In this document: in pieces, positions 30,634-64,000 of the stretch
Layout: each line of letters opens with the position of its first letter
Numbering within the stretch: the stretch's first letter is position 1
DNA from: Styela clava
Lineage: Eukaryota
DNA length: 64,000 nt
Direction of reading: 5' to 3'
Assembly (NCBI RefSeq): GCF_964204865.1
Contig: NC_135264.1
Coordinates: forward strand, 7,068,001 to 7,132,000
Translations under genes and position numbers: made by a program
Notes under the pieces: generated by a model
Database searches by the model: none
The model's input: the letters and a program-made list of their open reading frames with translations, nothing else
What the model was told of the DNA's origin: nothing

Positions 30634-33600
30634 CTATAACGCATTATATAATTCATTATCTACAACTAATTTCTCGTCTGAAACACTACGTTTATTTTTC
30701 TTTTGTTTGTTGACTTCGCTGTATATAGGAATATCGTTGACTTCTTCTACTGGAGAATCGTTATTTGATATGTCGTTCAAATCAATGGTTTTGCTTTTCT
30801 TCAACTTCTGATGTGTTGTATGGAGCCTAAATTGAAAGTATCAGTACAATGAATTATGAAGTACATACATTTTAAAGTACAGCAATATAGGTGTCAAACT
30901 ATCCACAGCCATAAATTGACATTTTTACATTTTTGTTTTCATTGAATGTAACTTCGGGTTTTTATCAAGCAAAAATTTAGACGTCCTTTTGAAAAAATAT
31001 TGAGTTTAACAGTTTTATTCATCTTACACTTATGAAAAGTAAACCTGTTCGCGATATGAACAATTACTTTCCTCATAATGTCTTGATGCAATTCATCACT
31101 ATATATATATATATATATACAGAAGTTGATTTCAAATATTTTTATAGTGAAGAAAGCGAAGAATACCTTATCATCTGTTAAATATTCTTAGTTTATTTAT
31201 TTCACTCATACCTTACAGCCGATAGTATCAATGCAATCGCTAAGATTCCACATAGGATCCCAAGAATAATGACAACGAGGCTTTCAGTTGTTTGTCCTTT
31301 ACTGTTTTCGTAAACGACATGGTTCACCCCTGCTCAAAATAATACATTTTCTTAATATTTTGTTTGATATGATTATAGCTTTAATGTCTATTCTTACACT
31401 TTGTTTAATGTCTATTCTTACACTTACGTCCAAGAGTAACGGTAGCGGCTGCGTTAAGTGAAAATTGAGATGTACCTCTGGTAGCTTGATCGGGTTTCTG
31501 CGTTGAGCTTATAAATGCGGCATCGGTGGTTGATACTGCAAACGATTTATTAAATTCATTCACATTTGGAGTTATAATGCAGGAGTGAATATTATCTGGA
31601 TTGGAGATTAATTTTGCGAGCATGAAATTCGTATCTTTCCGTAATTAAGCTATCAGGTTCATCTCATTATTAACCAAAAGTGACCAATAGTCTTCGAGTA
31701 GATAGGCACATTGTTGGGAATACAACACCCTCGGTTGGGTAATAAATTGCTAATATGCTCCCAGTACAGAGAAGCATGTGTGGTGTTTGTTAGGAATAAA
31801 AATATTAGCGTTGCTGCATGCTTTTTCTGTAGTTATGTATACCCATGCACCACAATCAGTTTTGGGTATCCACATCCACAATTCTACATTGAAATTACCA
31901 CTTTTAAAGACTTTTTAGCCCATTGTAGGTATTTTTGGGGAGTAAAATATTTTCAGCTTAAAATTTGCTTAGAGATAGATGAGTGAATAGGGAGAGCAAG
32001 ACCTCATTGGAATTTTCGGCAATAGTGACTACCACTACCAGAGCACTTTTGCAGTGTATTTGTGTCAAAATATACCAGAGTCCAAATTAATTTGCACAAT
32101 AGGAAATATGTCTGTACGTAAATTATCTGAAGATAACAAGTTTGTGCGTCATTTTGTTGTCGATAGCTTTTTTACCTCACTCTCTTTTATCGCAACCTAA
32201 CCTCTAGATTACGTTAGAATAATTTAATGATCACCTGAGTCATTATTATAAGCAACGTAGCTGTATTTTATTTTGAATATGTGCCAATCTTTGTAATCAT
32301 GATTGTCGCTTTCGAACAAAACTTTTGGAGGATATGCGTCTTTTCCGGTGAACCAAATCTTGTGTGTACATGTGGTAGTAGCATTGTGAAGGATTTCACA
32401 ATCAATTTTGTCAGGTTTAAATATAAAGCAAACACCTGGTTGGAAGTCACATATGTTCTGACCTGTTTCGAAAAAAAATTTGTAAGATCACATACATTAT
32501 TCAAAAAAATAAGGTAAAATTTTTGCTAGTTTCATAATATGTTGATTATGCCATAACTTACTTGTCGAGAAATGTAGCGTGGATGCAATTTGGATGCCAT
32601 TGACTTCTTTATTATAAATTACAGACAGCTTCATAGGTGACCCATAGGGCTGGGCATTTTAATCGAAACGAAATTTTGCTTTCGAAACGAAATCGAAACG
32701 AAACACACGTTTGTCACAGACAGTGAAACATGTCACCAATATTACCCAACGAATTTATTGTACCGTATATATACTGGCCACGGTACATATTTTCCAGAAT
32801 TAAAACTACAAAAAGGAAGCACTGGTGGCTAATTCGTAAGCATGAACCGATAATGATAATTCCACAAACGTTTCTGCTTAATGACAAAGCAGTGACCAAA
32901 TGGCACCAGAATAATACGAATTACGTCATTGTTAGAGATGGGGCTCACAAGCAGCATAGCATATGGGGCTCTTAACGTATCAATGCTCATTTTCTATTTT
33001 ATCCGACGCCACAGATCCTCTTGATCCAGTACATTGTAAAAAATATTTTTTAATCTGAATTCCGAATACATTCTAAACTCCAGGAACATAGGAAATGGGC
33101 TTTCATGATATTATCGGTGAGTGAAATTAGTTATTTTTGCTCTAGGGAAATGGACTTAATTAATAAACATTACAGTAGTTATGAATTGTGGCCTATCTTG
33201 ACCAGCACAGAAAAAAGAACAACTAGGCGCCCAGAGAAATGTTTTAAATTATACGGTAAAATTAACATTAACTCATTGACTGTTTATCGTCAACGTGACA
33301 TCGACCTCGTTCAACTAAATTTCGCCACAATTATCCCTTCCCACAAATATTGACTATTGTGCTACTGGGGGGAATTGATTTTTATTTTGCTTATAACGCG
33401 ATCATCGTCGTAATGAAATGAGTGGACCCGATTCACAAATTTCCATCCGCCAATGACGGAGAATTAAGACTGAAAATCGTGTTTTATTTTTCTTCAAGGC
33501 AGCTCTGTGATTTAAATATTTCATGTCGACTGTTGTGGTTTTAGTATTGTTTTTAAGTTAATACCACAAACTTGAACTGAACGATATTATTATTAACGAC

Positions 33601-35032
33601 GGCAGTCTAACAATAAAATCTGCGATATATACTAAATAATATTTAAGAGCTATTTCCTATGAGGTAAATGCAAGAAATGCTCGGTCATTATCAAAACTAA
33701 GGATGAAAAAGAATAATTACGACAAAATTTGATTTTATATTTATTGCCGCGCTAACACAGACTATCTCGACAATGTTGAAATATACGATAATAATTGTAA
33801 AATATTTTCAATCAAAAACTTCCCCGATAAGTTATACTGCAAGTCGGCGCTGACTTGAATCATTTCATGTCGACAGTCATTTATTGCGCGTCGCAAAGAG
33901 TGTCTTCGATTACGATAAAACATAAAAAATGAAATAATTGTGAAATGTTTTCAATCAAACCGCGGACGGCGGCGCTAGGACTTGTGTGCGATATTCAATA
34001 TTCTTATAAACACTAAAAACGATATTTGAGAGTCGCAATATTCGAATGAATTCGGATATTAATTTCGAATTGGACATCGCTGAATAATACCTTGACTGAT
34101 TTCTGGTTGCATTTGCTATGACGTCATAATATCCGTTTCGGAAGTCGAATGAGCGCCGTTTCGACATATCAGTGTTTCGAAACGTATCGAAACAGTGTTT
34201 CGAAACGCCCAGCCCTAGTGACCCATTGGTTTAGCAGTACATCAAATAGCCTGAAAAACCTAGAGGTCGAGACAACATCAACGGCGATTTCTTAGTATTT
34301 GTTTCATCTGTTCTGGGAATAATTGACAATACTAAATGAATGACAGCTCACAGCTATCTGGGTATGTCGACTGACATTTATTTTCTTTGGGACAAGCTGC
34401 GAAGCTCAGAAAAAGAAAGTTTGTTAATGTAACTGTACAAGTACAACAAAGAAAAATTTTGTTGGTGAAAAACACTCGAAGCCAATTGTGAGCCAATTCT
34501 ATTTGATATTGGTCTAACAGAAAGAGGATGCCTACCTACAGGAGTGCCAAAGTAAAATCTTGCGAGATAATTTGATTCCCCTTTTCTTCAACGAAAATCT
34601 TTATGTGAAATATGGTATATAACTGTGGAATAAAGTAGGCCAACGGAAATATATCAAACAAACCATTTAAGCTCAGTCGTACGCTATACCACCATTATTC
34701 ATCTCTGTGTTTTGCAACTAATTTCATTTTATCTATTTTCAAGATGATTGCTTCTCCCTTGGATGTCGACGCGTCGGAAAATTTCCACGAGCAATTTTCG
34801 TTCTTACTTTTTTGATAAGGTGGTGTTGATATATATCCTTCAGTATTGTTTAGATACAAATTTTCAAGACTGCAATATCCTCTGGAACAATTTGTCAAAT
34901 AGGCTAAATACAACAAAAATATTTGTTTAATATACCCGAATTTCGATTAGAAGTGTATAGTATTGTACGCGTTTACTTACCTAGGATAATATTCGCGTAC
35001 AAAACGTACTGGGAATACGACATTGCTTTCAT
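30634..35032 (-). pseudogene. CUB-like single-pass receptor, copy A (subfamily alpha); one in-frame nonsense codon, otherwise intact
   Basis: Exons 35032-34981, 34903-34664, 32462-32235, 31535-31428, 31329-31212, 30826-30634 (939 nt). Leader MKAMSYSQYVLYANIILAYL, GYISTPPY...NCSWKF, TM LVVIILGILCGILAIALILSAV, tail with PIYSEV and DNELYNAL. TAA at 34697-34695 where copy C has TAC. Confidence 0.8.
32645..34217. mobile_element. Non-autonomous hAT (Ac-type ends) element in intron 2 of receptor copy A
   Basis: 11-bp TIR TAGGGCTGGGC, perfect 8-bp TSD GTGACCCA, subterminal CGAAAC repeats. The paralogous site near 45134 (GTGGCCCA) is empty. Confidence 0.92.
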
Positions 35033-36997
35033 TACTGAATACATTAATGATCAAGCTATAGTGCAGTAAAATAAGAATAGTTGTTTTCAATTTTTTTTTG
35101 TATGTGGAACCACCGTAGTAAAAATTAGTCTGTTAGATCTATAACGTTCACGACCCCTTTTTCTATCCCTGAAATAATGATATACAAAAATTACGCAGCA
35201 AAGTAAGTTTCGGCATCTTTTATCAAGTTGTCTACAATTTCTTCCTACCTTCTATCCTAATATATAAGCTTTCATTTCAAATTTGAATGTAAATGATGCG
35301 TGAGATATTTATATCTGTCCCCCATGGATCATCGACATGACTATGTTGTTTAGTAATATATTAACCTTGCTCAGTTTGGATGATTCATCAGTTTTCATGA
35401 AGTGACTTCCTCTGCATCAATTTCATTTAAGTTCCGTTCAAGACTTTTTTACAATGTACTGATACCGTTTATACTAGGAAGTTTCATTTTTTACCTCTAA
35501 CTATATTTCTACTTAGACTGCTACATAACTTGTATTTTCTGGATACAAAATGAAGATGCGTTTAACATTTAATCGACTAGTAGTTTGGACTAGTCATTCC
35601 ATTCGTTTGCACTAATTTTGATCGTGAAATGACGCTTGATGAAGTATCCTGTCTGAGTATGGTCAGTATTGAGTAAACAGTATTGTAACTGGTAACCCTT
35701 TGTGCGTATAACCTTTTTCACCAACATTTCAACTAATGCATAGGCTGGATTTTGCTCATTTTTTATATGTTAATATTATCTGGGGATCGTGTACGAACTA
35801 CGAAGTCATGCTGAGTCGTGGTTTCGGCCGATATATTTTCACTGGGGGAGATTTAACCATCCAAGCTCTGTTCAGTATATAGTCATGTCTTGAAATGAGA
35901 TGACACTTGTTAAACAGACTGGACACCTAGTTTTATCAAACCCAAACTCAAACCTTAAAACATCAAATGTATGTTTCTGGTGTCCAATCCTGTTTTTGCT
36001 TTTGACACTATCATGGGCACTATTTCAGTGCTTAACAGTTAACATGCCACTCGAAACATGACAGAAATGCTCAAATATATGGATACAAAAGTCAAATGAT
36101 TGCATCATAAAGTTCTCCCAATATGAAATAACCCTATTTTCAACGATTAATTGACCATTTATTATGAACGTCGATTTTACTGAATAAGATATTTATTAGG
36201 ACTATGCGACTCTAAAATTTCGTAGTAAGACTTGTGGTTTTCCTTGGTACTTAATTAACAAAAGCAACTCACCGGGTTTTACAGTATTCAGTAACCTGAA
36301 TAAAATTTGCTTATATCTTATATTACAAAAAACCTTTCAGAGCGACTGATTAATAAACATGATATATGTTTTTGCATACTTGTCTGCACAATGCTCACGC
36401 TCACTATGTAATGATAATAGCCCACACACCATAGGTTAACAGGAAATAGTGGATGCCTAGTTAAATATTCTGCATCCTTTTAATCCAGGTACGGTATATT
36501 GGAACAATTGTTATACCTAACTCTAAAAAGCAAAAACACTTTTATAAAACAGCTCATCATTGCAATATTTATCAATGCATATAGTGGACTATACATAACT
36601 TAATTCTAAAATGACATAAGTTTATGAATCGCTTGTGGAGAGACAGTAGATGAGTGGTGTGTTGTTACACTGATAATAATTTTGCTCAACTTGGGAATCA
36701 TGTTTTTACCGTTTTAATTTCTATTTCATTAGTAAGAGACAAAAGTCTAGAATTCGCTTCACAACTGCAAATTTAGAAACTGACCACGTCTATAACAGTC
36801 GTGTATGGAGTATCCATATTCATTCATACCACTAGGAGTGCCATTGAGCATTTCCTTTTCAGCTGGTTTGTCAAACTGCCGTCAATGTGGGATTCGCTTA
36901 TGTGCAAAGTCATTATTATAGTGTTGTTGTCGTGAGTTAGTGTTTTCGTAACTAGTCAACACTTGCAGTTAATTTTCTGTGTGATTACCACATTTCC

Positions 36998-38574: not shown

Positions 38575-40080
38575 TTATAAAGAAGAATATAGTTGGTTGT
38601 CTACCATTATCCTTTCGTCGTGATTTATTGATTGAATTGAAGTTGTGTTAACCGTGCTGTACACTGGCATCTCTTGCAGATCTTCAGTTGCCCCAGCAAC
38701 TTCATTCTCGTTGATAGAGGTATCCTCATTTGCACCAGAAGCTGATCGATATTTAATTAATCTGAAAAAAGAATTTAAAACTGAAATTCAGTCATTGCGA
38801 GAAAGTGATATAGCTTTATATATATATATATATTGTAGTTTAACCATACCTTACTGTTGTATACATCAGCAACACTGTCAAAATGACACAAAAACCGCCT
38901 AGAACGATTACTAATGTAATGTAGTTGGCTTCTTTTGCTTCGTTAAATCGGTCTTTAGTGCCAACGGGAATGGTCGTTTCCAATTTCGGACCATCAGTGC
39001 TGTTGTTAAAATAGCCTGTCTCAGAAGTTGCGTTGTCAGCTGCCGTCGTTGTTGCAGCTAAACTGGCCGTTGTTGAAACCGGTGTCCTGGTGGGGACTAA
39101 AATGAATTCGTAAAATTCAAATTCAAATTACATTATGCATTGAAAATTTAATATAAATCATAATACTTACTGATGTAATTGTTACAGTCCACATAGGTGT
39201 ATTTTATTCGAAAATTGTGTTTACTCTCGTAATAATTTCTTTTGTTTTTGAATGTAAGCTTGGGTGGATATGTAGCGTTCCCCAAAACCCAAATTTTTTG
39301 ACTGCAAGTTGAAGTTACATTCGATAAACGTTCACAGGTTTTGTATATTCGTGAAAATATGAAACAAACACCTTGAATGAAATCACAAATATTTTGCCCT
39401 AAAAGTAAGATAGTTCAACATTAATAAAAATAACGTTACGTAAGATTTTAGGATGTTTGCAATTTAAACAGATATACCTTGTAAATCCAGTTCTCCAGTA
39501 CACCACCAAGTTGAATAGTATGAGTATATTAATTCCATTCGTTCAATTTGTAAAACAATCATATCGTTATTTTTTTCAATATTTTCGGGGAATGTCCACA
39601 CGCAGTTTTGAACGTTTGACCCGCTTGCTTGTGGCGAGTTGATATATCCAACTTTCTTTCCAAGATCATTTGTCTCCCGACAGTCACCTCTCGTTGATGT
39701 CGGAAAATATATATCTGAAATGAGAATCGTTGAATTATGCTTAGTTTTTTATATTCTGCATCATGTTGCCCCCGACAAAAAAATTTTGTTTTAATGATTT
39801 GTCTGATTTGTGAAACCATTTAAAGAAAACCACAATGGAGTTGGACCAAGTTGGAAACCGATCCAATTTGTATCATTTCGCGGCTTAGACATTACAGTTG
39901 TTCTATTGATTTGTTGCATGTATTCAACTCGTTTCATATATGACTTTGTGTTTAACGTTTTAGGGCAGATTATTATTACAGCCAATTTAATTCTAAATAA
40001 CCTCGCTTGAATGAGACAAGTTTAATAAGATTCTTACCTGCAATTAATCCGAGCAAGATCCAATAACTTGTAGACTTCAT
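38575..40080 (-). CDS. CUB-like single-pass receptor, copy B (subfamily beta), intact, about 313 aa
   Basis: Exons 40080-40038, 39714-39478, 39398-39171, 39096-38850, 38761-38575 (942 nt, open). Signal peptide MKSTSYWILLGLIA, GYINSP...NCVWTF...IVLQI...WWC...NFRIKY, S/T stalk, TM YITLVIVLGGFCVILTVLLMY, tail with PVYSTV and DNQLYSSL. Confidence 0.88.
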
Positions 40081-41855: not shown

Positions 41856-43667
41856 AATCATTAAATCTGAAGACAGCCTCTAAAACCCGGTACATTCCAT
41901 CTAGCCACTGATCATCTTACTTACTAGCATTAAAATATCTAAACAAATCCTAATCTAATAGTCATAAAATAAGAACTTGGTAACCTTTATTAGAGGACTT
42001 ATCATACTTTAACGGTATTTAGCAATATATATTGAGATAAACTTTATTAGACGGATTTCTAAAATGGTATAAGTTTATGGATCACGTGTAGAGTGACAAT
42101 AGTGGCGTTGTATATTTTTGTCTTCACATGGGTAGCAATTTTGATCAATTTCGTGTATAATGTTGATATCATTTTCTTAACCGGACATAGCAAAGTTAAA
42201 AGCTTGAATTACATTTTTATTTTTTCAATAGAAGACAAAATTCTAGAAGTCGCTTCCCTAAAAATGGGTAAAAAATCAAGTCCAAACGATAATTCCATTC
42301 CATGTATCGCTCAAAAGACAGTATATAACAGATAATATCAACAACGTAATGAAAAGAAGTGTGTCTTCGGGTTAATGGTATCATATTGGGCATTCCACTT
42401 TCTTTTTAAAATATATCATGACGACATATATATACTATAGATATAATTTTTTTTAATCGCGTGATATAGTCTACAAAAGTTTATTAACAGGAAAGACATG
42501 TACACTAAACTCCCAATGAAAATGATTGCGAGTTGATTAATTTGAAAACAATTTTACAAATTCAAGACGGTAATAAAACTTCACACCATCAGAAAACCTG
42601 AGGTCAGAATACTTGTTTCTAGCCGCGAGAGATAGGGGAGCATGGCCTACTAGTTGCTGACGAATCAAATTGTCATTCCATATTTTGAAAAAACGGGTAA
42701 ACGATAAAACAGATTCGACCGTAAAAATTTATTAATTCTTAGATTCGTTATTGCGCAGATAAAATAACATAGCTATATATATATATATATTTATTTTTGT
42801 TTTCAAAAAAGAAAGGCTATATTACGTTAAGGACTGTTCAATTCATCAAAATTAGCATATTTTGTTTTAGTGTTAAAGAAGCATAGTTTTTCGAAGTCGA
42901 AAAAATTCACTTATTTGGTCGTATTTAATTTTTTAATTTGTTACCAATACCCAACCAATTAATCAAATAGGAATAGGCCATAGTATATATCAATAGCTTG
43001 ATAAAAAGTGTATCTTTGGCTTACAGTACATTTAATTAGCTGAGCTTCGACTGTGTCACTCAAAAATCTCTGTGAGTTTTAGGGATTCGTTTTTTTTTTT
43101 GGGCGATTTTGTCTACTGTGACAGATTGAACACCCATTCTACTTAGTTTTGGCCTTATTGTCCGTCCATATATTTGAACATCGCTCTCGTGTTTAATTTC
43201 ATATGGTTTTGTTTAGGTGGGTATGTTTTCTCGGTAAGATATGTCGAGGATTCGAGAATCGAAAATTTAAGAATCGGATAAGAATCGAATATTTGTAAGT
43301 AGCCATACTTTGCATCCTTATTCATGAGTACACGTTGTGGTAAAATACCAAAAGCAGCGTTGAAGATCGTTTTTTTTCTGCTGACAACGGATTCAAAAAA
43401 TAGTTTCATATAGCTATTGTTTCAACAAAACTTGTTTCAAATAGTATTTTGTTGTATTTTTTAATAAGGCATGTAAAGATTGCTTTCACTTTCTACAGCA
43501 TTGAAATATTTTGAGATCACTCAGAAAAATATAATAAAACAATGAAACGTTAAAATTAGTGAAAATTACTAATAGCCCACATGCCTGATATTCAATATAT
43601 AAGACAGCATATACAAATATAATTGTCACTACTTGTATAGTTTTACATTGACATATTGTCTTTGTGA

Positions 43668-46461: not shown

Positions 46462-46980
46462 TACTGAATATATTAATGATAAAGCTATAGTGCAATAAAA
46501 TGAAAAAAGTTAATTTCAATTTTTTTGTATGTGGAACCACCGTAATAAAAATTAGTCTGTTAGATCTATAACGTTTACGGACCCTTTTATCTAGCCCTGA
46601 AAAAATGATATACACAAATTACGCAGCAAAGTAAGTTTCTGCATCTTTTATTAAGTTGTCTACAATTTCTTTCTACCTTCTATCCTATTCCTAATATATA
46701 AGATTTCATTTCAAATTTGAATGTGAATGCTGCGTGAGATATTTATATCTGTCACCCATGGATCATTGACAGAACTATGTTTTTTAGTAATATATTGACC
46801 TTGCTTAGTTTAGATCAGTGCTCTTCAACCTTTTTGTTATTGTGGAAGCCCTGATAAAATTTTTATGGAACCCCAATTAACAGAATTAAAAAAAAAACAC
46901 GAAATACTCGTAACACGAAAAGCTGAACAACAACTCTATTTTGTAGTATATACTTTCTCTAGTCTCGAGCAATATCTACA

Positions 46981-51232: not shown

Positions 51233-53567
51233 CCCCAGGCTATAGGCCATTTGTGACGCTCATCTTCAATGGTGACGTCACGTGGAATTTACTATGACAT
51301 CATAATAAGCATTCCACTTTTCTTTTGAAATATATCATGACGACATATAATAATCTTTTAATTCCGTCATATACAAAATTTTATCTACAGGCAAGATACG
51401 TACTCTATTCACCCAAGGAGAATGATTGCGAGTTGATTGATTTAAAAACATTTTAAGAAACTCAACTGTAATAAAACGTCATGACACCAAAAAACCTGAG
51501 GTCAAAATATTTATTTCTAACCGCGAGAGATAGGGGAGCATGGCCTAGTTGCTGACGAATAAAATTATAATTTTATTAATTGAAATAAAGGGGTATACGA
51601 TAAAAAGACACGACAGTAAAAATATAATATTTCTTAGATTCGTTATTGCTCAGATAAATTAGCATGGCTCTAAATAGATATTTTATTTTAAATAAAGGCT
51701 ACATTACATTAAAAACTGTTCAATTTATCTAAATTAGCATATTTCGTTTTGAAGATTGAAGAGGCAGAATGTTTCAAATCCGGAAAAATACAGTTATTCA
51801 ACCGTATTTGATTTTTTACCTGGTAAACTGTATATATTTTGAACACAAATTTTAAACCGAATAAAAAATTGAACAAATATCAAATAACAATATGTCAATG
51901 ATTATATATATCAATAGCTTGATGAAAAAGTGTATCTTTACCTTACAGTGCATTCAGCTTCGACTGTGTCACTTCGGAAAAGTTTATCGACATTACAGAA
52001 ATCTGATTCAAGTTTGATCCAATGGCAACTAAATTTAACAACGGTTTGATACCGCACCAATGTATACTGACTAACCGTCAATATTTCCGCCTTTTTAAAA
52101 ACGTAGTTTATAAAGAAGAATATAACTGGTTGTCTACCATTATCCTTTCGTCAGACTTTTTTAATTGAGTTAAAGTATTGTTAACCGTGCTGTACACTGG
52201 CATCTCTTGCAGATCTTCAGAGCCAGCAACTTCATTCTCGTTGATGGAGTTACCCTCATTTGCACCCGAAGCAGATCGATATTTAATTAATCTAAAAATT
52301 GAATTTAGAACTGTAGAAATTCATTCCTTGCGATAAAATGATATAGCATTATGTGTGTATATATCGTAGTTTAACAATACCTTACTGTTGTATACATCAA
52401 CAAAACTGTCAAAAACATCCAAGAGCGATCACTAATGTAATGTAGTTAGCTTCTTTTGCTTGGTTAAACCGGTCTTTAGTGCCACCGGGAATGGTCGTTT
52501 CAACATTCGATCCATACCTGCTGTTGTTGAAAGAGCCAGTCTCATAAGTTGGGTTGTCAGCTGCCGTCGTTGTCGCAGCTACACTGACCGTTGTTGAAAC
52601 CGGTGTCCTGGTGGTGGCTAAAATGAAATCGATACTTCGATTTAAACTACATTATGCATTGAAAATTAAATATACATCATAATACTTACTGATGTAATTG
52701 TTACAGTCCACATAGGTGTACTTTATTCGAAAATTGTGTTTACTCTCGTAATACTCTTCTTTGTTTTTGAATGTAAGCTTGGGTGGATATGTAGCGTTCC
52801 CCAACACCCAAATTTTTTGACTGCAAGTTGAAGTTACATTCGATAAAAGTTCACAGGTTTTGTATATTCGTGAAAATATGAAACAAACACCTTGAGTAAA
52901 ATCGCAAATGTTTTGCCCTAAAAATGAGACAGTTCAATATTAATCAACATAACGTTAGGTAAGTTTTTAGGATGTTTGCAGTTGAAACAGATATATATAC
53001 CTTGTAAATCTAGCTCCCCAGTACACCACCAAGTAGTTGACTCATACAAGTATATTAATTCCATTTGTAAAACAATCATATATATCGTTATTTTTGTCAA
53101 TATTTTCGGAGAATGTCCACGCGCAGTTTTTAACTTGGTTTTCCGTTTGCTAATCGTGAGTTGATATATCCAACTTTTTTACTTAGATCATTTGTCACCC
53201 GGCAGTCACCTCGTGTTGGTGAGGAAATATATATATCTGAATGAGGAATCGTTGAATTAATGCTAATTTTTTATATTCTTCATCATATTTCCCCCCGACA
53301 TAAAAGTTTGGTTTTGATCATTTACCTGACCTGTGAACTCCTGAATATCTAATGCTGTACTGTACGAGTATCCCCTAATAGAAACAATGCCTACAGACAA
53401 AACGCCTTCAATTTGAAAGATTGCTACAAGATGTGATTGGGAACTTCTTGCATAGATCAGATTTAAAAACAAACTGTGTTAAACATCCCAATGAACTTGG
53501 GAATTCCATGCGATACAGGCAAGATCCCGTGTTGCCCAGTCGCCTGGTTTAATTTTCTATAAAGTTT

Positions 53568-54262
53568 CGGGTGTCTCCAAAATGTCGTGTCCTACGTGTC
53601 TCACTTTTCCCACGTGTCCTACTTGTTCGACGTGTCCCACTTGTATCACGTGTCCCATTTGTCTCACTAGTTCCACGTGTCCTACGTGTCCCGCTTGTAG
53701 CACGTGTCCCACTCGTTTATTATATATGCACATAACACACGAGATAAACTGCCTGGTTATATTTAGTTTTGATAGATATGTTTGCAATCTTGCTAATTCA
53801 TTGTCGCCGTTAGGAATCCGTATTTTTGACATTTCGCGGAATAGAGAAATCTGTACTCGTAACACCGATCCGCTTTATCGCAATGCTGCCACTCAGCTTA
53901 TTTTTAAGATATACCCGTTATCATCTCACGAAGTAAAATTTATTTTAGTACTATAAAACCTAATTGGATTAATTAATTTATTATCACAATCCGCGTTGCG
54001 TTTACAACTTTGTATAATGTTTCAGTGATTCGATTCGATTTTAGTCATGGTATGGTTTCCAACGCTAACCAACCATAATGTGTGCCTGAGGCGAAACAAT
54101 TGACGATTTTAGCAAAATACACGCGGTATTAGCGACTAGTGGGACACGTGGGAGAAGTGGGACACGGGACAAGTGGGACACCAGGTACTAGTGAAACACG
54201 TGGGACACGGGGAACAAGTGGGACACGTGACACAAGTGGGACACGACATTTTGGAGACACCG
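53568..54262. mobile_element. MITE with 9-bp subterminal tandem repeats (Merlin-like)
   Basis: About 24-bp TIR CG(G)GTGTCTCCAAAATGTCGTGTCC, perfect 8-bp TSD TAAAGTTT, CACGTGTCC/CACTTGTCC arrays in mirror orientation. The paralogous site near 61506 is empty. Confidence 0.88.
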
Positions 54263-55389
54263 TAAAGTTTCCTATATTTGACGTCTTATACCAGCTAGAC
54301 CAGAATAGGCAGTACAGTAGTTTTGATAGCTCAGTATTTTGTTCAGATCTTACTAATGCGAAGCTCATAGACTCCCGAGATATTTCCGTGAACCTCAAGT
54401 CCACCGCCCATCGGTTGGAAACCCATTCAGTTTGTCGGCATGCGCCGGCAACGCTTTCAATTCCTTACTGTATGTATCCGCTGAACAGCGTTTATGAAGG
54501 TTTCCCATCAGTTTCCTTGTTTATTTCCGTAACTATAACCAATCAGCAAGGAGTCAATAATGACGCAACACGTAACAATTGCAATTTCTGCACCCTGCCG
54601 CACAGACACTTCTGTCGCTAAAACAGATATTCAAGCATGGTTGCAAACATTGCCTCGTTTTTGTAGTTTTGAATGATTTTTGTCAGTTTTCAGTTGTATT
54701 TCAAGAAATTTATTGTGAATTAATTAACCTAATTGTCATTATGTTTTCCGCAGAGCTTTACTTTAGTTGCAGTAATCGAAATTGAATCTCGCAAATGCTG
54801 CGATGGACAAAGCTAAACTTAGCTATATGTAGGGTGCTATCGATATGAACCCAAAAATAAAGACATCAGGGAAACATAATAATAGAATAACAAAGAACGA
54901 AATGTAATAAACAAAATGTATTCATGCAGTGGCGTATCTAGGTAAAATGTCGCCCATGGCAAAGGTTTAAAAATGCGCCCCCTACTTCGCTTGTTTCCTT
55001 TTTTCGTTTACATGAAATTGGTTGCTCTCAACTACGCAACATAACAAGCAAATTAATAACTACACAATAAACAATAAGCAGTAGGCGATCGGCAATAACA
55101 AGTTCTTAGAATACTATATATATTTCGTGACGCAAATTTGCCAATGATTTCATCAAAATTTGTTTTTCTTGTTTCACCCCTCTTTATACTTAATATAGCC
55201 AGATCACAAAGGTTTCCTGGCTAATTGAAGATCGAAGGTATGACAGAATTAATTTTAGTTTACTAAACGACCGATCGCAATTTTCTATGGATACTGCCAA
55301 TGTCAGCAAAATTTGCAAAGCTATCCGGAGATTGGGGAGATCCAGAAAAGACTCTTTGACACACACTGTTTTCTCGTCATAGTCTATAT

Positions 55390-55696
55390 CTTACATGGGC
55401 AAACTACGGCCCGCTGGCCAAATCCGGCCCGTTGGCTATTTAAAACTGGCCAGCCTGATGCTTCCACAACCAAACTAAAACCAAATTTTGATGTTTTAGC
55501 TGAAAAATAGCTCGAGGAATTTGTTTAGATTGCGATTAAATTTAGTTTCTGCACGAGGCTAATTGTTTTGCACTTTTGCTTTTGTAATACTGTAAATATT
55601 GTCCATAATATGTAACTTTTTACGTCACACTTACATTTCCCGTCACTATAGGCGGGCAAAATGGTTGGCCCGTGAACCGAAGACCTTGCCCCCCTG
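55390..55696. mobile_element. hAT Charlie-type MITE nested in the transposase remnant
   Basis: Perfect TSD GTCTATAT; degenerate ends (GGGCAAACTACGGCCCG ... TTGCCCCCCTG); subterminal GGCCCG repeats. Confidence 0.82.
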
Positions 55697-56185
55697 GTCT
55701 ATATTAACAGACCTCACAACTTCTGAAACCTGATCTCGATGCGCCTGGTCATGAGTTGAGTCAAATATAAGACCATATGACTTTGCTTTTTTAATTTTTC
55801 CTGTCAAGTTTTTGCGAACATGAGATGCCATAATGTGAATAAATTCGTTTTGAACACCTGGGGAAATGTAAGAGGTTGAATGTGGATGGCTTCCAATGAA
55901 ACCGAGATGCTCTCGCAGCACAGGATCAAAGACGGCAAGGAATTTTATTAAGCCAAGAAAATGACCAACATTTGAATTACTATCTGCTTGAAGTGACTCC
56001 CTGTGCCCTAACAAAGCGAGATTTTGTTCCGCCAGACACTTTATTCCATGCGATATTCATTTAAGAACCCCACTACATTTTTGCCTTTCCTTTTTAATTT
56101 GTACATGGAAATCGGCGTCAATAATTCTTGTTTATTGCTCAAATTTCTTTACACGCTGTAAAACATTCTCTCTCATTGTAAGAAT

Positions 56186-56654
56186 CAGTGGCGTAGCAAG
56201 ACTCTCGTGACCCCCCTAAAAACTCTCGGACATAAGCTGAAACAACGCTTTTTTTATTTCGTCAAAAAGCATAACATGTCGGCAATGGTAACCTAAAATT
56301 TGCCGTTTATCTTGGTTACTTTAATTTTTTCATACGTTCATCCTCTTCTGCCCTTTTTCTGCGTTTCTGTGCGCCACTGAGAGGTTTTGCTTTTGACATC
56401 ATTCTGACAGCCTTTGTAATTTTGCCGGTGCGATCAAACCACAAGACGCCGAAAATCGACGACTCCATGGCATTGTTACGTAACAAAACGATTTGTGCAG
56501 AACTAACATCATCGTTATAAGATGTGCATTACTTGTTTTGCACTGCAGCTTTTGGTTTGCGGCTTAAATTTCTAAATTCTAACCGCTTTGGCCCCTTTGC
56601 GCTGTGGGCCCTCCCGCGACCGCGGGGGTTGCGGGGGTGGATGCTACGCCACTG
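56186..56654 (-). mobile_element. hAT Tip100-type MITE nested in the 54927-56988 element
   Basis: 13-bp TIR CAGTGGCGTAGCA; TSD GTAAGAAT / GTACGAAT; carries a transposase-like N-terminus MSKAKPLSGAQKRRKK on the - strand from 56399. Confidence 0.87.
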
Positions 56655-59482
56655 GTACGAATATTCATAAATTTTCACTCCAGTACGATATCAGAGCTAA
56701 TATGAGGTGCAGTAAGTCCAGTACCGTATCAGTTTCGGCTTATTGATGTTGAATTATGACATCACCGTCAATTGCGCTAAGTGACTGAACAAACTGCTTG
56801 ATCGTTGGAAACTGCAAACTGCATTGACTTTTGTTAAATTTGTTCTGATTTAATTAGAAATACGAGTTTCATTCATTTTCATGTTTTATTGAAAATTATA
56901 CAATTAGAACTTTTCGCGTTTTTTGCGCCCCCGTCCGAACGGCGCTCATGGCACGAGCCATGGCTGCCATACCCTAGATACGCCACTGTATTCATGCTAG
57001 TGCGACCCGTGTCTGATCATACTTTGCAAAAGATTTGCTCCAGCAGTTCTTTATTCTTAGAAACAATCTGTTCCATCTCACTTTTAAGTTGTATTTTGAT
57101 TTAGGTTACACGCAGTGATTTTGGTCGGTAGGCTATTGTTTTGTCACTGTGTCAATTAATTTGCTGTTATTACGTAATGAATGCACGTAGCAATCAATGA
57201 TGTAGTAAAATATCATTTCTAGCAAATCAACCATTCGATTTGACCAATTTAAATGTCTGATATTTGAACCTCTACCCATAAAATAAGGACACATGTTGAA
57301 AAAAGGACGTTTTTTAGAAATAAGGGCAAAATTATTTTCGAAGACAAATACCATCGGAATAAGGACAAATCTTAGAAATGAGGACGTTATGGCAGCCCTG
57401 GCTTTATAGTACCTGCAAGCGGCACATGGTTGATTAATTTTAATGAAAATGATGGTTTCAAACACGTAAACCATTTTACATGCGCCAACGCATCGAAATA
57501 CTTCCAGAATAAGCATGAAGTTTACAATTGTAAAGTATAGGGGTAATTTTCCCGCAGTCAATGGTCGGGGAAACGTCCATACCGCTGGTGCGCTATCAGT
57601 CCTTGTCTCTAGAGATCGCCCTCGCCCGCTATTTCCCACCTCGAATGAAGCGATATGGGCATGTTTTTGTCCGTTTTGCGTGTTACGCCACAAAGAATGT
57701 AGTGCCACATTATAAAATACTCCCATAGCACGTTTCTTGTGTCTTTTTCCTCACGCTAAAAAAGAGCTTTGTCGGTGGTTCGCGGCCATAGTAAAAAACA
57801 GTAAAATGGTACGCGGTCAGTGAAAGGTTGAAAACCACTGAAACGTTTTAAAACAGATTATTACAGCCAATTTAATTCTAAATAAACTCGCTTGAATAAA
57901 ATAGCGTCATTTACAAGTTCGATAAGATTCTTACCTGCAATTAATCCGAGCAAGAGCCAATAACTTTTATTCCACATTTTTATTCTCCCCGATTTCTTTC
58001 ACCTCTAAATTATCATCAACATAGCTTACGTCTCAACACTTCGCACCATTTATACGAGTGAGCTTTTATGATTGTTGATACTTCTGCGTAGCAATTAGTT
58101 CATAAATTCCAAGTGATATTAATTATTAACATGATTTATCATATAATAAAACAAGGAGAAGCTTTTTGTTAACGTTTTCGCGTTGGTGGCAAAATGTGAA
58201 TGTTTATGATACGAGGCAATTTGGATAACTTTTGGCTTTGTTCTGCCAATATCGAACTAAAACAAATTACCTTAAGAAAATTGCTTACGAATACACGATG
58301 TTGGGATGACTTTTAGTTCAGCAATATAAGTCAATAATTTGAAATCACGCGGTCACATTAGGGCTGGTGTCTCTGTTCTAAGCTTGTTGGACTCAACTCA
58401 TAGAATAATTATTCTTGTCCTGCCATATTACTGTCCATGCAAGATTTATGTGTACCGTACAATCAATGCGGGTCATTTTTACCAATGTATAATCTAAGTA
58501 AATTTTAAATGGCGGTATTTTGAATGAACATATCGTAAAATAACATGCCCGTTTAGTTGTTTCCATGGAACGTTCTATTTGACCATTTTTTCAAAAAAAA
58601 AAAAATAACCTCTTTGATAAATCTTGTTTGTGCTTTATATTGAAATAATCTGAAACCGGTTTGACGCTGTTTTGTCGAAAAGCCCATACCACGAGTAAAC
58701 AATAAGCTAAAAGTAAAATGTCCCGCTGAGGACATTCAAATCAGTGACGTACAATTATGAGCTAAATTATTCAAATATATATATATACAAAGTTTTATCA
58801 GACCAAGAATATGTGTAGTGCTGGAGGCCTTCCACATTAGACTAAATATTTTCGAGTTGAATATAATTATATACCTATATATTTTTTGTAAAAATTGAGA
58901 ACAAAAAACGCCTTCATTGAATAATTACGGATTCAAGACACTTTTATTTAAAAAAATAGTATTTAGAAAAATATCATATGTAGCTAGATGTACATTATTA
59001 TTATACAGTATGCACAACGTCCGATACTGCCAATTAACAGTATACAATATTCGTAAAGCTAGAGACCATACATCTAATATTATAAATATTATCCCTCGCG
59101 CGATGATAACAAATGACAGATTCTATTCAATCTGATTTTTGCGAAGTACATTAGTTCTTTTTGATGATGAGTTGTTGTACGGGAGTATCTCTTAACATGC
59201 ATTAATTTGATATTTCGCCAAAGCGCCTTCGTAATATTATATGAATAACGCAATGAAAAGAATTGTATCTTTGGATTAAAGTAGCCTACTTTAAATATTT
59301 AGTTGGATTCGATTGTTGCACTCCGGGAAAGGTATATCTGGAACGACACAAAAATATTTTGATCGATGTTGTTTTAATGAAAATATTATACGTTATTTCA
59401 ACAACCGCTTGATTCCACATTAGGCTACTACGTATTGGCCAATATCCGATCGTAGAAATTCAAGCGTTTTCGAAGAGTTGAT

Positions 59483-61839
59483 TTATGAAGAATATAGATG
59501 GTCCTCTACAACAATCCTTTCGCTTGAATTTTCATATTGATATGAAGTTTCGTATATCGTGCTGTATACTGGCATCACTTGCGGTTCTCCAGTTGCAGCA
59601 GCAACAACTTCGTTCTTTCTGATGATGTGACTTTCAATTGCTTCAGATGCAGATCGATACTTGATTATTCTAAATAAAAATGGAATTTTTTGCTGCCCTG
59701 TTTTTTGTTGGCGTGGTAGTGGTATAACTATATATATATCGTGGTTCAACAATACCTTACTGCTGCATATATCAGAGATACTGATAGAATGACGCAAAAA
59801 CATCCAAGAACAATCACTGATGTAATATAGTTGGCTTCACTTGTCCCGTAACAGTGGTCTTTGGAACCACCCAACGCTGTCGTTTCTAGTTTCGGTTCAT
59901 TAGTTCTGTTGTTGAAAGAATCAGTCCCAGAAATTACGCTGTCCTTTGCCGTCGTTGTCGAAATCGTTGCCCTGGAAGTGTCTGAAAAGAAATGAGTAAA
60001 ATTACGCTACTTCGTTTAAGTTTTTAGCAAATATTGAAGTTTTTTTTTCACAATTTCGAATATGAAAGACGCATTTTTAGTCTTATAGTACAATTGAAAT
60101 TGTTTACAATTAACCTGATTGTTAGAAACGAGAGTAATTTTCCACATAATTTTGCTCAAAGCCCCACTAGTAAACAAAGTTAAATAACAGACACTGACAA
60201 TAGAACTCCAAGCGACCTCAGACATGGTAATTTTTATTTGTATGTTTATCCTTTCGACAGTGATGTCAGTGAATTATCAGAATTTAGAAAGAATTCAATT
60301 TCACACAAGGAAAACAGAAAAGTGGATGGGCAGTCGACGACATTGGATTACTTTTATTAAAAAAGGTTAGCATAGAAACTTTCTTGGCAAATGAACATTG
60401 AGTTTAATTAATAAAAACTTTCATGCGGAAACGACCAAAGAAAGTTCAGATCTTATTTTAGCATTCCGTGAGCGCGAAACAGCGCGCGATATTAACCAAT
60501 GGAGAGCATCTGGAAAGGAACCTACTACAAAAATCATTCAAGAAATAAAACAATCTATACTAGAGTAAAATGTATATTGATATTGAACATACAGTACAAA
60601 TAATATACTTACTATTATAATTATTGCAATCCACATAGGTGTATTTTATTCGAAAATTGTGTTTACTCTCGTAATACTTTCCTTTGTTTTTGAACGTAAG
60701 CTTGGGTGGATATGTAGCGTTTCCCAACACCCAAATTTTTTGAGTGCAAGTTGAAGTTACATTCGATAAAAGTTCACAGGTTTTGTATATTCGTGAAAAT
60801 ATGAAACAAACATCTTGAATGAAATCACAAATGTTTTGCCCTAAAAGTAAGATAGTTTAACATTAATTAGAATACCGTAACGTAAGATTTTAGAATCTTT
60901 GCCATTTAAACAGATATACCTTGTAAATCCAGCTCTCCGGTACACCACCAAGTTGAATAGTATAAGTATATTAATTCCATTCGTTTAATTTGTAAAACAA
61001 TCATATCATTATTCTTGTTAATATTTTCGGGGAATGTCCACACGCACTTTTGAAAGTTTGACCCGCTTGCTGGTGGTGGCGAGTTGATATATCCAACTTT
61101 CTTACTTAAATCATTTGTCACCCGACAGTCACCTCTCGTTGGTGTCGGAATATATATATCTGAATTAGGAATCGTTAAATTAATGTTTATATTTTATATT
61201 CTGCCTCAAGTTGCCCTCACAAAGAAGTTTGATTTTGATGATTTGCCTGATTTGTGAACGCCTTCGAAGAAAACCAGTCAATACTGTACTGCACGAGTGG
61301 CCTTTAATATAGATACAATGCCCACAAACGGAAAATGACTTCAGTTTGTAAGATCTGCCGGAACCTTATTGCATAGATGAGATTCAAGAAGAAACTGTGT
61401 TAAACATTCCCTTGAACTTGATAAACTTGCAAAGTTTAAAGAAAGAAAACCATGCGATACGAGCAAGATCCCGTGTTGCAAAGTGTCCCGGTTTATTTTT
61501 TGTTATAAAGTTTCCTAGATTTGACGTCTGATGGTAGCTAGCAAAGGTCACAGACTCACAGAATATTTCTGTGAACCTCTTGGAGTCCACGTCCATCGGT
61601 AGAAAGCCGACTCAGTTTGTATCGTTTTGCGACTTAAAGAGTACGGTTGTTTTGTCGCGTTGTTAGATGTATCCAACTCGTTTCATAAGCGCCTTTGCGT
61701 TTAAAAATTTCATGGCAGATTATTACAGCCAATTTAATTGTAAATAACCTCGCTTGAATAAAATAGCTCCATTTACAAGTTAGATAAGAAACTTACCTGC
61801 GATTAATCCGAGCAAGAGCCAATAACTTTTATTCTTCAT
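59483..61839 (-). CDS. CUB-like single-pass receptor, copy E (subfamily beta), intact, about 307 aa
   Basis: Exons 61839-61797, 61159-60920, 60840-60613, 59981-59756, 59669-59483 (924 nt, open). MKNKSYWLLLGLIA, GYINSPPP...KCVWTF, TM YITSVIVLGCFCVILSVSLIYAAV, tail PVYSTIYETSYQYENS...EDHLYSS. Confidence 0.88.
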
Positions 61840-63844: not shown

Positions 63845-64000
63845 GATTATATGAATAACGCAATTAAAAGAATTGTATCTTTGGATTAAAGTAGCCTACT
63901 CTAAATATTTAGTTGGATTCGATTGTTGCACTTCGGAAAGGCATATCTGGAACGACACAAAAATATTTTGATCGATGTTGATTTAATGAAAATATTTTAC
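63845..64000 (-). repeat. Duplicated 3' flank of a beta receptor gene
   Basis: Near-identical to about 59236-59391, which lies just downstream of the copy E stop codon. Confidence 0.85.

What the first reader, a model, noticed from the sequence alone, without database searches (positions are those of the whole stretch)
30634..64000. Tandem birth-and-death family of CUB-like receptors with tyrosine-motif tails: candidate immune or recognition receptor cluster
Seen: five paralogs in order alpha-beta-alpha-beta-beta. They share a signal peptide, a two-exon Cys-rich domain (second exon exactly 228 nt in all five), an S/T stalk and a TM with GxxCxIL. The four copies that retain a tail carry P-[IV]-Y-S-x-[VI] plus a distal LY motif. 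Only B and E are open. Known: GYIxSP, CxWxF and a terminal FxIxY are CUB-type strands, but the insert CFIF-x6-C-x9-C is not part of the canonical CUB pattern. YxxV/L and NxLY are SH2- and PTB-type docking motifs. Inference: tandem expansion, high pseudogene rate and signalling tails are the signature of diversified immune/allorecognition receptors. I do not recognise this architecture as a described family.
Basis: partly seen in the sequence, partly recalled or inferred. Interest (0 to 1): 0.82.

Follow-up and report, generated by a model that had tools for sequence, protein, structure and literature searches.

The report
Sea-squirt CUB-fold tyrosine-tail receptor cluster
The sea squirt Styela clava carries a small tandem cluster of unnamed, transcribed genes for surface proteins that join a very divergent CUB-fold outer domain to a short tyrosine-motif tail; half the copies are broken, and an immune role is still only a guess.

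Summary
On the minus strand of window 30,634-64,000 (Styela clava, C19:7.098-7.132 Mb) lie five paralogs in the order alpha-beta-alpha-beta-beta. A sixth, open beta copy starts 95 bp past the window end.

All copies share a signal-peptide exon, a two-exon Cys-rich domain whose second exon is exactly 228 nt with AG/GT borders, an S/T stalk, a TM helix and, except C, a tail with P-[IV]-Y-S-x-[VI] and a distal LY. B and E are open. A has one TAA. C has a frameshift and a roughly 740-bp deletion that removes the tail. D has frameshifts and a 4.3-kb transposon insert.

B equals RefSeq XP_077976723.1 ("uncharacterized"). Introns 2-4 of B appear spliced in contigs of a run guessed to be RNA.

Pfam finds no CUB, but two AlphaFold models place the domain among solved CUB domains (top 23 hits, Z up to 9.1 and 9.7).

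Only S. clava proteins match among 1.84 billion representatives. The cluster is a satellite of a larger C6 array that this scan has already reported on other DNA.

dN/dS is 0.14-0.55 in the ectodomain, so there is no sign of diversifying selection. The tyrosine tail suggests SH2/PTB docking (Csk-type YSxV). The immune or allorecognition reading is untested.

The parts
30634..35044 (-). Copy A (alpha), 6 exons: signal peptide 35032-34982, first domain exon about 34904-34663, 228-nt exon 32462-32235, stalk exon about 31536-31420, TM exon about 31333-31208, tail 30826-30634. Broken by one in-frame TAA at 34697-34695.
   Evidence: the RefSeq model XP_077965591.1 (P0002) bypasses the stop through an internal donor and so lacks half the domain
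38575..40080 (-). Copy B (beta), intact, 313 aa. Exons 40080-40038 (signal peptide), 39714-39478 (CUB N-half), 39398-39171 (228-nt CUB C-half), 39096-38850 (stalk + TM), 38761-38575 (Tyr tail + stop).
   Evidence: identical to XP_077976723.1; exon junctions 38761|38850, 39096|39171 and 39398|39478 seen in RNA-type contigs; AF2 model and fold search
43646..46473 (-). Copy C (alpha), pseudogene. It has a 1-nt deletion in the first domain exon (about 46333-46092). The 228-nt exon 44959-44732 is intact. The end of the TM exon and the whole tail exon are deleted (about 740 bp relative to A).
52108..57977 (-). Copy D (beta), pseudogene. Tail 52290-52108; TM exon frameshifted at 52412; 228-nt exon 52917-52690 intact; first domain exon (about 53250-52995) has +1 and -5 indels. 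The signal-peptide exon 57977-57936 is separated from the body by a 4.3-kb insert.
   Evidence: the insert carries a DUF4371 (hAT-type) remnant; RefSeq now annotates only a 171-aa fragment (P0011)
59483..61839 (-). Copy E (beta), intact, 307 aa. Signal peptide 61839-about 61797, first domain exon about 61159-60920, 228-nt exon 60840-60613, stalk/TM about 59981-59756, tail 59669-59483.
   Evidence: equals XP_077965735.1 (P0009); all AG/GT sites kept
53586..57800 (.). Transposon-derived insert in intron 1 of D. It has inverted arrays of a 9-nt unit (53586-53712 and 54139-54245) and a DUF4371 transposase fragment (55646-56014, minus strand).

Best explanation
This is a species- or lineage-restricted tandem family of small type I membrane glycoproteins in Styela clava. 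Each intact gene (B and E in the window, F just outside) encodes a short signal peptide, one divergent CUB-fold ectodomain of about 140 residues, an S/T-rich N-glycosylated stalk, one TM helix with a conserved Gly-x-x-Cys, and a disordered tail of about 60 residues. The ectodomain is a CUB beta-sandwich whose C-terminal half, the 228-nt exon, carries four extra cysteines and a short helix. The tail has two conserved islands: [MI]-P-[VI]-Y-S-x-[VI]-N and [DS]-E-[RK]-[IL]-x-V-[DE]-[ND]-x-L-Y.

Shown here: the gene structure, intactness or breakage of each copy, transcription and splicing of B, the CUB fold (predicted), restriction to S. clava in the protein libraries, membership of a wider S. 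clava superfamily (C6 and C10 arrays), purifying selection on the ectodomain, and mosaic divergence that points to unequal crossing-over or gene conversion.

Inferred: the proteins act as cell-surface receptors or transmembrane adaptors. On this reading the CUB domain binds an extracellular protein or glycan ligand. A Src-type kinase phosphorylates the two tail tyrosines. The proximal pY-S-x-V then recruits an SH2 protein; it matches the Csk-binding YSSV of Cbp/PAG, so a damping or inhibitory output is the likeliest. The distal V-D-N-x-L-Y offers a PTB- or SH2-type site. Which cells use it, and for what, is not known.
For: Gene models and lesions. Public proteins identical to B and E. Splicing: run X1 (study P1) shows all three junctions of introns 2-4 of B; a contig of run X5 (study P2) shows the exon 2/3 junction only, with E-type bases; DNA run X9 covers the introns. 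Fold: the model of B has pLDDT 72-90 over residues 30-170. Foldseek top hits are almost all CUB. The VIA-align wide search has CUB domains as its top 23 (Z 5.8-9.1; Kremen 5fws_A at Z 9.1, rmsd 2.3 A, 97 residues), followed by unrelated jelly rolls at Z 5.5 or lower. The same is seen for the 33%-identical paralog P0003 (Z 6.3-9.7). The exon-2 profile's best PDB sequence hits are the neuropilin-2 CUB a1 domain, in register with GYIxSP...CxW (E 0.12). ESM-Atlas neighbours are CUB clusters (0.85-0.89). Restriction: the 228-nt-exon profile against 1.84e9 representatives gave only three true hits, all S. clava. Superfamily: hhalign against the C6/C10 exon profile gave 98.5% probability, E 3e-15, with reciprocal genome hits. 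Selection: dN/dS is 0.14-0.22 for the 228-nt exon, 0.26-0.55 for the first domain exon and 0.38-0.43 overall. Tail motifs are kept between alpha and beta, which are only 36% identical overall. YSSV is the Csk SH2 site of Cbp/PAG (PMC3492796).
Against: Pfam CUB (PF00431) does not match any exon or any full-length member even at E<=10. A full-length profile finds no CUB chain in the PDB by sequence. The fold evidence therefore rests on AlphaFold models built from only 7 sequences, with Z of 9-10, only a little above the tool's background of 7-8. The signalling steps are inferred from short motifs that can arise by chance. The distal motif is not fully kept: E and F have D-H-L-Y-S-S at the C-terminus. 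The runs are only guessed to be RNA, and their contigs mix alleles and paralogs. Intron 1 and the signal-peptide exon were not covered by the RNA-type contigs. No ligand, cell type or phosphorylation data exist.
Confidence: 0.6

Rival explanations
1. One reading: a diversified innate immune or allorecognition receptor cluster, analogous to NK-receptor clusters. Variable CUB ectodomains would recognise non-self or polymorphic self ligands, and the tyrosine tails would transmit inhibitory or activating signals in haemocytes.
For: Tandem expansion with half of the copies broken. Mosaic exchange between copies. An older annotation of the species holds an intact D-like gene where this assembly has a wreck. 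Contigs from other individuals differ at the most variable loop, codons 147/148 (RN to GK), with 8 of 13 differences non-synonymous. The cluster belongs to a much larger array family on C6. It is restricted to one species in the libraries.
Against: Ectodomain dN/dS is 0.14-0.55, with no excess of replacement changes. Both subtypes carry the same tail, so there is no activating/inhibitory pairing in this cluster, and no charged TM residue for an adaptor. The motifs fail the ITIM, ITSM and ITAM rules. There is no expression or challenge data. The contig differences may be paralog cross-mapping.
Confidence: 0.25
2. A non-immune surface protein. It could be a CUB co-receptor or auxiliary subunit, as NETO, LEV-10/SOL-1 or Kremen are for channels and Wnt receptors. 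It could also be an adhesion or gamete-recognition molecule, with the tail serving sorting (YxxL) and scaffolding.
For: Single-pass CUB proteins commonly act this way. Kremen, Gpr126, neuropilin and Neto2 CUB domains are among the best structural matches. Purifying selection fits a fixed partner. The distal Y-x-x-L at the C-terminus of A, B and D fits a YxxPhi sorting signal (sequence).
Against: There is no LDLa, kringle or other companion domain and no orthologue outside S. clava. The high rate of copy loss is unusual for an essential auxiliary subunit. E and F lack the terminal Leu.
Confidence: 0.2
3. A decaying recent expansion without present function: all copies are transcribed relics on their way to becoming pseudogenes.
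For: Three of six clustered copies are already broken. RefSeq models of A, D and F are truncated or patched.
Against: dN/dS is 0.14-0.22 on the 228-nt exon. All AG/GT sites are kept in B, E and F. Tail motifs and cysteines are conserved between alpha, beta and the 8.5-Mb copy at 33-36% identity. Homology to C6/C10 arrays shows long persistence.
Confidence: 0.07

Closest known systems
CUB domain (Pfam PF00431), as in neuropilin a1/a2, C1s/MASP CUB2, Kremen, Gpr126, TSG-6 and spermadhesins
   Same: Predicted beta-sandwich superposes on about 100 residues at rmsd 2.3-3.4 A, Z 8-9.7. The N-half motifs G-Y-I-x-S-P, C-x-W-x-F and I-x-L-x-I are in CUB register. It is extracellular.
   Different: No Pfam or sequence-profile match. 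The domain is about 140 rather than 110 residues. The C-terminal half has four extra cysteines (C-x6-C-F-I-F-x6-C-x9-C) and a short predicted helix.
CDCP1/Trask and DCBLD1/2 (vertebrate single-pass CUB proteins with Src-phosphorylated tyrosine tails)
   Same: The design principle is the same: CUB-type ectodomain, one TM helix, and a short tail that works through phosphotyrosine docking (named from established knowledge, not tested here).
   Different: No detectable sequence similarity. This family has one CUB-fold domain instead of three CUB-like domains or CUB-LCCL-FA58C. The tail motifs differ (YSxV and NxLY rather than YxxP/YxxL). It is a tandem multigene family limited to one ascidian.
Cbp/PAG1 transmembrane adaptor
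   Same: The proximal tail motif P-[VI]-Y-S-x-V-N resembles the Csk SH2 site YSSV of Cbp (PMC3492796). Both are short single-pass proteins whose tails are docking platforms.
   Different: Cbp has almost no ectodomain, has juxtamembrane palmitoyl cysteines and has nine tyrosines. Here there is a folded ectodomain, a mid-TM cysteine and two conserved tyrosines. There is no homology.
Larger CUB-like tyrosine-tail receptor arrays of S. clava reported earlier in this scan (here seen at C6:18.2-18.6 Mb, C6:1.33 Mb and C10:15.6 Mb)
   Same: The second domain exon is homologous, with the same four-cysteine pattern (hhalign 98.5%, E 3e-15; reciprocal hits). The layout of domain, stalk and TM is the same.
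   Different: Only 25-33% identical. The C6 first exon lacks the G-Y-I-x-S-P motif that the C19 copies keep. The C6 TM lacks the Gly-x-x-Cys motif. This is a separate chromosome and a small cluster of 6 copies plus 1.
Botryllus fester / uncle fester and vertebrate NK receptor clusters
   Same: Tandem, fast-turnover clusters of single-pass receptors with tyrosine tails in a related animal group (PMC12582321 and PMC12065747, listed).
   Different: Those use SCR/Ig or lectin domains and canonical ITIM/ITAM logic. No sequence or domain relation to this family; the function here is untested.

Membership tests
CUB domain (PF00431) | Match to the Pfam CUB profile at or above the gathering score | tested here: not met
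   No CUB hit at E<=10 for single exons or for full-length P0001, P0002, P0003, P0008 and P0009. A full-length profile finds no CUB chain in PDB sequences. The best sequence-level signal is the exon-2 profile against neuropilin-2 CUB a1, E 0.12.
CUB domain (PF00431) | Ten-stranded beta-sandwich superposable on solved CUB domains | tested here: met
   AF2 models of B and P0003: top 23 VIA-align hits are all CUB, Z 5.8-9.1 and 6.3-9.7, with 96-113 residues at rmsd 2.3-3.6 A for the matches at Z 8 or more, followed by a drop to unrelated folds. Foldseek top hits are CUB, probability up to 0.99 but E only 6e-3. These are predicted models from a shallow alignment, not experimental structures.
CUB domain (PF00431) | Four conserved cysteines forming the C1-C2 and C3-C4 disulfides | tested here: inconclusive
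   Cysteines at the C1, C2 and C3 positions are present (R-G-x-C, N-C-x-W, W-W-C in beta). The alpha and 8.5-Mb copies have Y instead of the third. The C-half has four or five other cysteines whose pairing I could not read from the model.
CUB domain (PF00431) | Ca2+-binding acidic triad of ligand-binding CUBs (Glu/Asp/Asp plus Tyr) | not tested
   This needs a residue-level structural alignment, which the tools do not return.
ITIM / ITSM / ITAM immunoreceptors | [ILVS]-x-Y-x-x-[ILV] (ITIM), T-x-Y-x-x-[IV] (ITSM), or two Y-x-x-[LI] spaced 6-12 residues apart (ITAM) | tested here: not met
   The proximal motif has Pro at position -2 (M-P-V-Y-S-T-V, I-P-I-Y-S-E-V). The two tyrosines are 24 residues apart (21 residues lie between Y-x-x-V and Y-x-x-L), and E and F lack the final Leu.
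CDCP1 / DCBLD / NETO / Kremen type CUB membrane proteins | Companion domains (several CUB, LCCL, FA58C, LDLa, kringle-WSC) and orthology across animals | tested here: not met
   There is no other Pfam domain. No relative outside S. clava among 1.84e9 representatives at E<=1e-3.
S. clava CUB-like receptor superfamily (arrays reported earlier by this scan) | Homologous second domain exon with the pattern N-I-C-x6-C-x-[VI]-x(7-8)-C-x(8-9)-C-x3-W, followed by a stalk and TM exon | tested here: met
   hhalign A1 against A7: 98.5%, E 3e-15. Genome searches hit each other's loci. The C6 loci show the same exon order.

The most novel reading that the evidence does not exclude
The C19 cluster and the large C6 arrays together would form a haplotype-variable recognition-receptor system of a solitary ascidian, built on a remodelled CUB fold instead of Ig, lectin or SCR domains. 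It would signal through Csk/PTB-type tyrosine docking. The C19 genes would be the least-diverged members that tie the whole system back to canonical CUB. On this reading the intact-versus-broken D copy and the RN/GK loop differences between individuals are real presence/absence and allelic polymorphism.
Probability: 0.2. Interest if true: 0.7.

Novelty: new variant of a known kind. Interest (0 to 1): 0.42.

Why it matters
Tunicates are the closest invertebrate relatives of vertebrates, and their surface-receptor repertoires are largely lineage-specific and poorly charted. This cluster shows that S. clava has built a multigene receptor family on a CUB fold so diverged that domain libraries miss it. 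It also supplies the members that still carry recognisable CUB motifs, which anchors the fold assignment of the larger arrays. If the tails do recruit Csk, SHP or PTB proteins, the family would be an independent invention of tyrosine-tail receptor clusters. It would give concrete candidates for haemocyte, gamete or tissue recognition in a solitary ascidian. As it stands, this is a well-defined gene family of unknown role.

Tried and rejected
Pfam on every exon and on full-length proteins found no CUB and only noise hits.

PDB sequence search with the 228-nt-exon profile and with the full-length profile found nothing relevant.

P0004 and P0005, from the big protein search, looked like distant hits. 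They are repetitive, unrelated proteins; P0004 carries bacterial-type repeat domains.

I checked whether the cluster continues past F. No further copy lies in L001:2500-10000.

I looked for an activating/inhibitory pair between alpha and beta and rejected the idea, because both have the same tail motifs and no charged TM residue.

I considered the PDZ-ligand reading of the C-terminus (S-S-L). It is not conserved: A ends N-A-L and E and F end Y-S-S.

Literature searches for CUB receptors in Styela or ascidians, and for the LOC and XP identifiers, found nothing on this family.

The contig differences cannot be used as polymorphism counts. Four X5 differences equal copy E's bases, so they are probably cross-mapped paralog sequence.

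No joined spliced model was handed to any search tool. Exons were searched by reference, and full-length searches used the public proteins P0001, P0002, P0003, P0008 and P0009. The only join was inside a script, to check B's reading frame.
Full report
WHAT IS THERE

The window is G000:C19:7,068,001-7,132,000 of Styela clava (species from the RefSeq names). It contains no N. A six-frame motif scan and ORF maps show that all the features described lie on the minus strand. They form five gene copies:
- A, alpha, 30,634-35,044
- B, beta, 38,575-40,080
- C, alpha, 43,646-46,473
- D, beta, 52,108-57,977
- E, beta, 59,483-61,839

The own-genome search adds two more. A sixth beta copy, F, starts 95 bp beyond the window end (L001:95-2400). 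A seventh, divergent copy sits at C19:8.50 Mb. No further copy lies in the next 7.5 kb.

GENE MODELS

Reading the minus strand of B gives five exons with consensus AG/GT borders and compatible phases:
- 40080-40038: signal peptide
- 39714-39478: first half of the domain
- 39398-39171: second half of the domain, 228 nt
- 39096-38850: S/T stalk and TM helix
- 38761-38575: tail and stop

The frame is 942 nt, or 313 aa. That join was made only inside a script, to check the frame.

The big protein search with a profile of the 228-nt exon returned a public protein, P0001 = XP_077976723.1 "uncharacterized protein LOC144432454". It is identical to this model. All full-length analyses used that record.

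E and F have the same five exons with every splice site kept. E equals XP_077965735.1 (307 aa). The RefSeq model of F (XP_077965490.1, 263 aa) stops in the TM exon, although an intact tail exon with its acceptor is present.

The 228-nt exon is exactly 228 nt, with AG before and GT after, in all six clustered copies.

BROKEN COPIES

- A differs from an open frame by a single TAA, where C has TAC. RefSeq's model for A (XP_077965591.1) avoids the stop through an internal donor and so lacks half of the domain.
- C has a 1-nt deletion in the first domain exon. It has also lost about 740 bp, comprising the end of the TM exon, the intron and the tail exon.
- D has +1 and -5 indels in the first domain exon and a frameshift inside the TM motif. 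Its signal-peptide exon (57,977-57,936) is separated from the body by a 4.3-kb insert. The insert carries a DUF4371 hAT-type transposase remnant and inverted 9-nt arrays.

TRANSCRIPTION

Public runs hold parts of the B stretch. The tool only guesses that these are RNA; none is on record as RNA.

Laid at 97% likeness or better:
- Contigs of run X1 (study P1) cover the exons and the 3' UTR but not intron 1. They carry the joints 39096>39171 and 39397/8>39477/8. They also have a loose end at 38763 whose letters are the end of exon 4.
- Introns 2, 3 and 4 are thus removed exactly as modelled.
- A contig of run X5 (study P2) shows the exon 2/3 junction as well.
- The DNA run X9 covers the introns.
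- Four differences in the X5 contig equal copy E's bases, so that contig probably comes from E or an E-like allele.
- The 43-nt signal-peptide exon was not covered.

WHAT THE ECTODOMAIN IS

Sequence-level tests are negative or weak:
- The Pfam CUB profile does not match any exon or any full-length member, even at E<=10.
- A full-length profile finds no CUB chain by sequence in the PDB.
- The only sequence-level signal is that the first-exon profile's five best PDB hits are all the neuropilin-2 CUB a1 domain. The alignment is in register with G-Y-I-x-S-P and C-x-W, but E is only 0.12.

The fold-level answer is clear:
- The AlphaFold model of B (7-sequence alignment) has pLDDT 72-90 over residues 30-170, a TM helix, and a disordered stalk and tail.
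- Foldseek's top hits are almost all CUB domains (E from 6e-3, probability up to 0.99).
- The Foldseek-independent VIA-align search of 48,161 chains puts CUB domains in all top 23 places. These include Kremen (Z 9.1, rmsd 2.3 A, 97 residues), Gpr126 (Z 9.0), C1s CUB2 (Z 8.7) and neuropilins (Z 8.6). Unrelated jelly rolls follow at Z 5.5 or lower.
- A second model, of the 33%-identical 8.5-Mb paralog P0003, gives the same list (Z 6.3-9.7).
- ESM-Atlas feature neighbours are CUB clusters, at scores of 0.85-0.89 that count only as a lead.

About 100 of the roughly 140 residues superpose. The remainder includes a short predicted helix (116-121) and the extra cysteines of the 228-nt exon.

My conclusion is that this is a CUB fold, probably a highly diverged CUB homologue, but not a member by the Pfam criterion.

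RANGE AND RELATIVES

The 228-nt-exon profile was searched against 1.84 billion representative proteins. It gave five hits at E<=1e-3:
- Three are S. clava proteins: B, A and the 8.5-Mb copy.
- Two are unrelated repetitive proteins.

The word search added only the E, F and D-like RefSeq proteins.

Within the genome, weak hits on C6 and C10 turned out to be true relatives:
- A profile of their corresponding exon aligns with the C19 profile at 98.5% probability, E 3e-15.
- That profile finds at least 11 exons between C6:18.205 and 18.596 Mb, and also hits the C19 copies back.

This matches the large arrays that earlier agents of this scan reported on other pieces of this genome. The scan has therefore found this superfamily before on other DNA. 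The C19 cluster is a small, separate subfamily. Its particular value is that it keeps the G-Y-I-x-S-P / C-x-W-x-F motifs, which the C6 first exons have lost.

HOW THE CLUSTER EVOLVES

Self-comparison shows these similarities:
- A to C: 80-90%
- B to D: 86%
- E to F: 92%
- D's 5' flank to F's 5' flank: 91%

This suggests an alpha-beta unit duplicated once, followed by beta-only duplications.

Synonymous divergence is mosaic:
- E versus F has dS 0.03 in the stalk/TM and tail exons, but 0.42 in the first domain exon.
- B versus E has dS 0.13 in the first domain exon, but 0.63 in the stalk exon.

This pattern points to gene conversion or unequal crossing-over.

dN/dS:

| Region | dN/dS |
|---|---|
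| Overall | 0.38-0.43 |
| 228-nt exon | 0.14-0.22 |
| First domain exon | 0.26-0.55 |

The intact genes are therefore under purifying selection. There is no gene-wide sign of diversifying selection, though three sequences cannot test single sites.

An older RefSeq record (XP_039257787.1, 313 aa, intact) is closest to copy D: 96% in the 228-nt exon and 89% in the tail. It has been replaced on the present assembly by a 171-aa fragment of the broken D. Either haplotypes differ in whether D is intact, or the assemblies differ. This is a hint of structural polymorphism, not proof.

THE TAIL AND THE LIKELY MECHANISM

Alpha and beta proteins are only 36% identical overall. Their tails nevertheless keep two islands:
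- [MI]-P-[VI]-Y-S-x-[VI]-N
- [DS]-E-[RK]-[IL]-x-V-[DE]-[ND]-x-L-Y

The motifs fail the standard immunoreceptor rules:
- The proximal motif is not an ITIM or ITSM, because Pro occupies position -2.
- The two tyrosines are 24 residues apart, with 21 residues between the two Y-x-x-[VL] motifs, so this is not an ITAM.

What the motifs do resemble:
- V-D-N-x-L-Y has the hydrophobic-x-N-x-x-Y shape of PTB sites. This comes from established knowledge and is partly lost in E and F.

The 8.5-Mb copy has a short tail without tyrosines.

From this I infer a surface receptor or adaptor. Src-type kinases would phosphorylate the tail, and the tail would then recruit SH2/PTB proteins, most likely with a damping output. 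None of this is shown.

Confirmed:
- the anatomy
- the CUB-like fold
- the birth-and-death pattern
- spliced expression
- the lack of a described family

Untested:
- the step to "immune or allorecognition receptor". It gets no support from dN/dS or motif rules, and it is not excluded.

The finding is a real, undescribed and lineage-restricted receptor family. However, this cluster is a minor satellite of arrays already reported by the scan, and its function is unknown.

Noticed in passing
L001:95-2400 (C19:7,132,095-7,134,400), minus strand: A sixth, intact beta copy (F) lies just past the window end. Its RefSeq model (XP_077965490.1, 263 aa) ends by reading through the TM-exon donor, yet an intact tail exon with AG acceptor and the same Tyr motifs follows. 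The annotation is probably short by about 60 residues.
   Followed up: partly
window 52108-57977 versus public proteins P0008, P0012 and P0011: The older S. clava annotation has an intact 313-aa D-like protein (XP_039257787.1) and a 406-aa isoform that joins an F-like first domain exon to the D-like 3' exons. On the present assembly the same accession became a 171-aa fragment of the broken D. This suggests haplotype or assembly differences in gene content.
   Followed up: partly
window 53586-57800: A 4.3-kb insert in intron 1 of D. It has two inverted arrays of a 9-nt unit (CGTGTCCCA at 53586-53712, its complement at 54139-54245) and a DUF4371 hAT-type transposase fragment (55646-56014, minus strand; E 6e-6, below Pfam's cut-off).
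   Followed up: partly
L002:8240-8860 (C19:8,500,239-8,500,859), minus strand: A divergent seventh family member (LOC120333921, 252/257 aa, 33% identical to B). It has the same domain and TM motif but a short, lysine-rich tail without tyrosines, making it a tail-less variant 1.4 Mb from the cluster.
   Followed up: partly
L003, L004 (C6:18.26 and 18.45 Mb), L005 (C6:1.33 Mb), L006 (C10:15.6 Mb): Homologous second domain exons of a larger array family. There are at least 11 exon hits between C6:18.205 and 18.596 Mb, on both strands. The first exons there lack the G-Y-I-x-S-P motif.
   Followed up: partly
window 39235 and 39240 (B codons 147/148), and 39372: Contigs of several runs read G-K instead of R-N at the loop that differs most among the paralogs (RN, GK, EE). 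They also read Ser for Gly at codon 103, a state seen in no paralog of this assembly. These are either alleles or unassembled copies.
   Followed up: partly
window 34697-34695 and 34840-34830: The RefSeq model for copy A avoids the in-frame TAA by using an internal GTAAGA donor after P-P-Y-Q-K-S. The resulting protein lacks about half of the CUB sandwich. Whether that isoform is really made was not checked.
   Followed up: no
window 8387-10244 and 46981-47350: Other first-stage notes on this window describe a type II membrane cyclophilin-like gene, and a hammerhead ribozyme in a Penelope-like repeat between copies C and D. I did not examine either.
   Followed up: no
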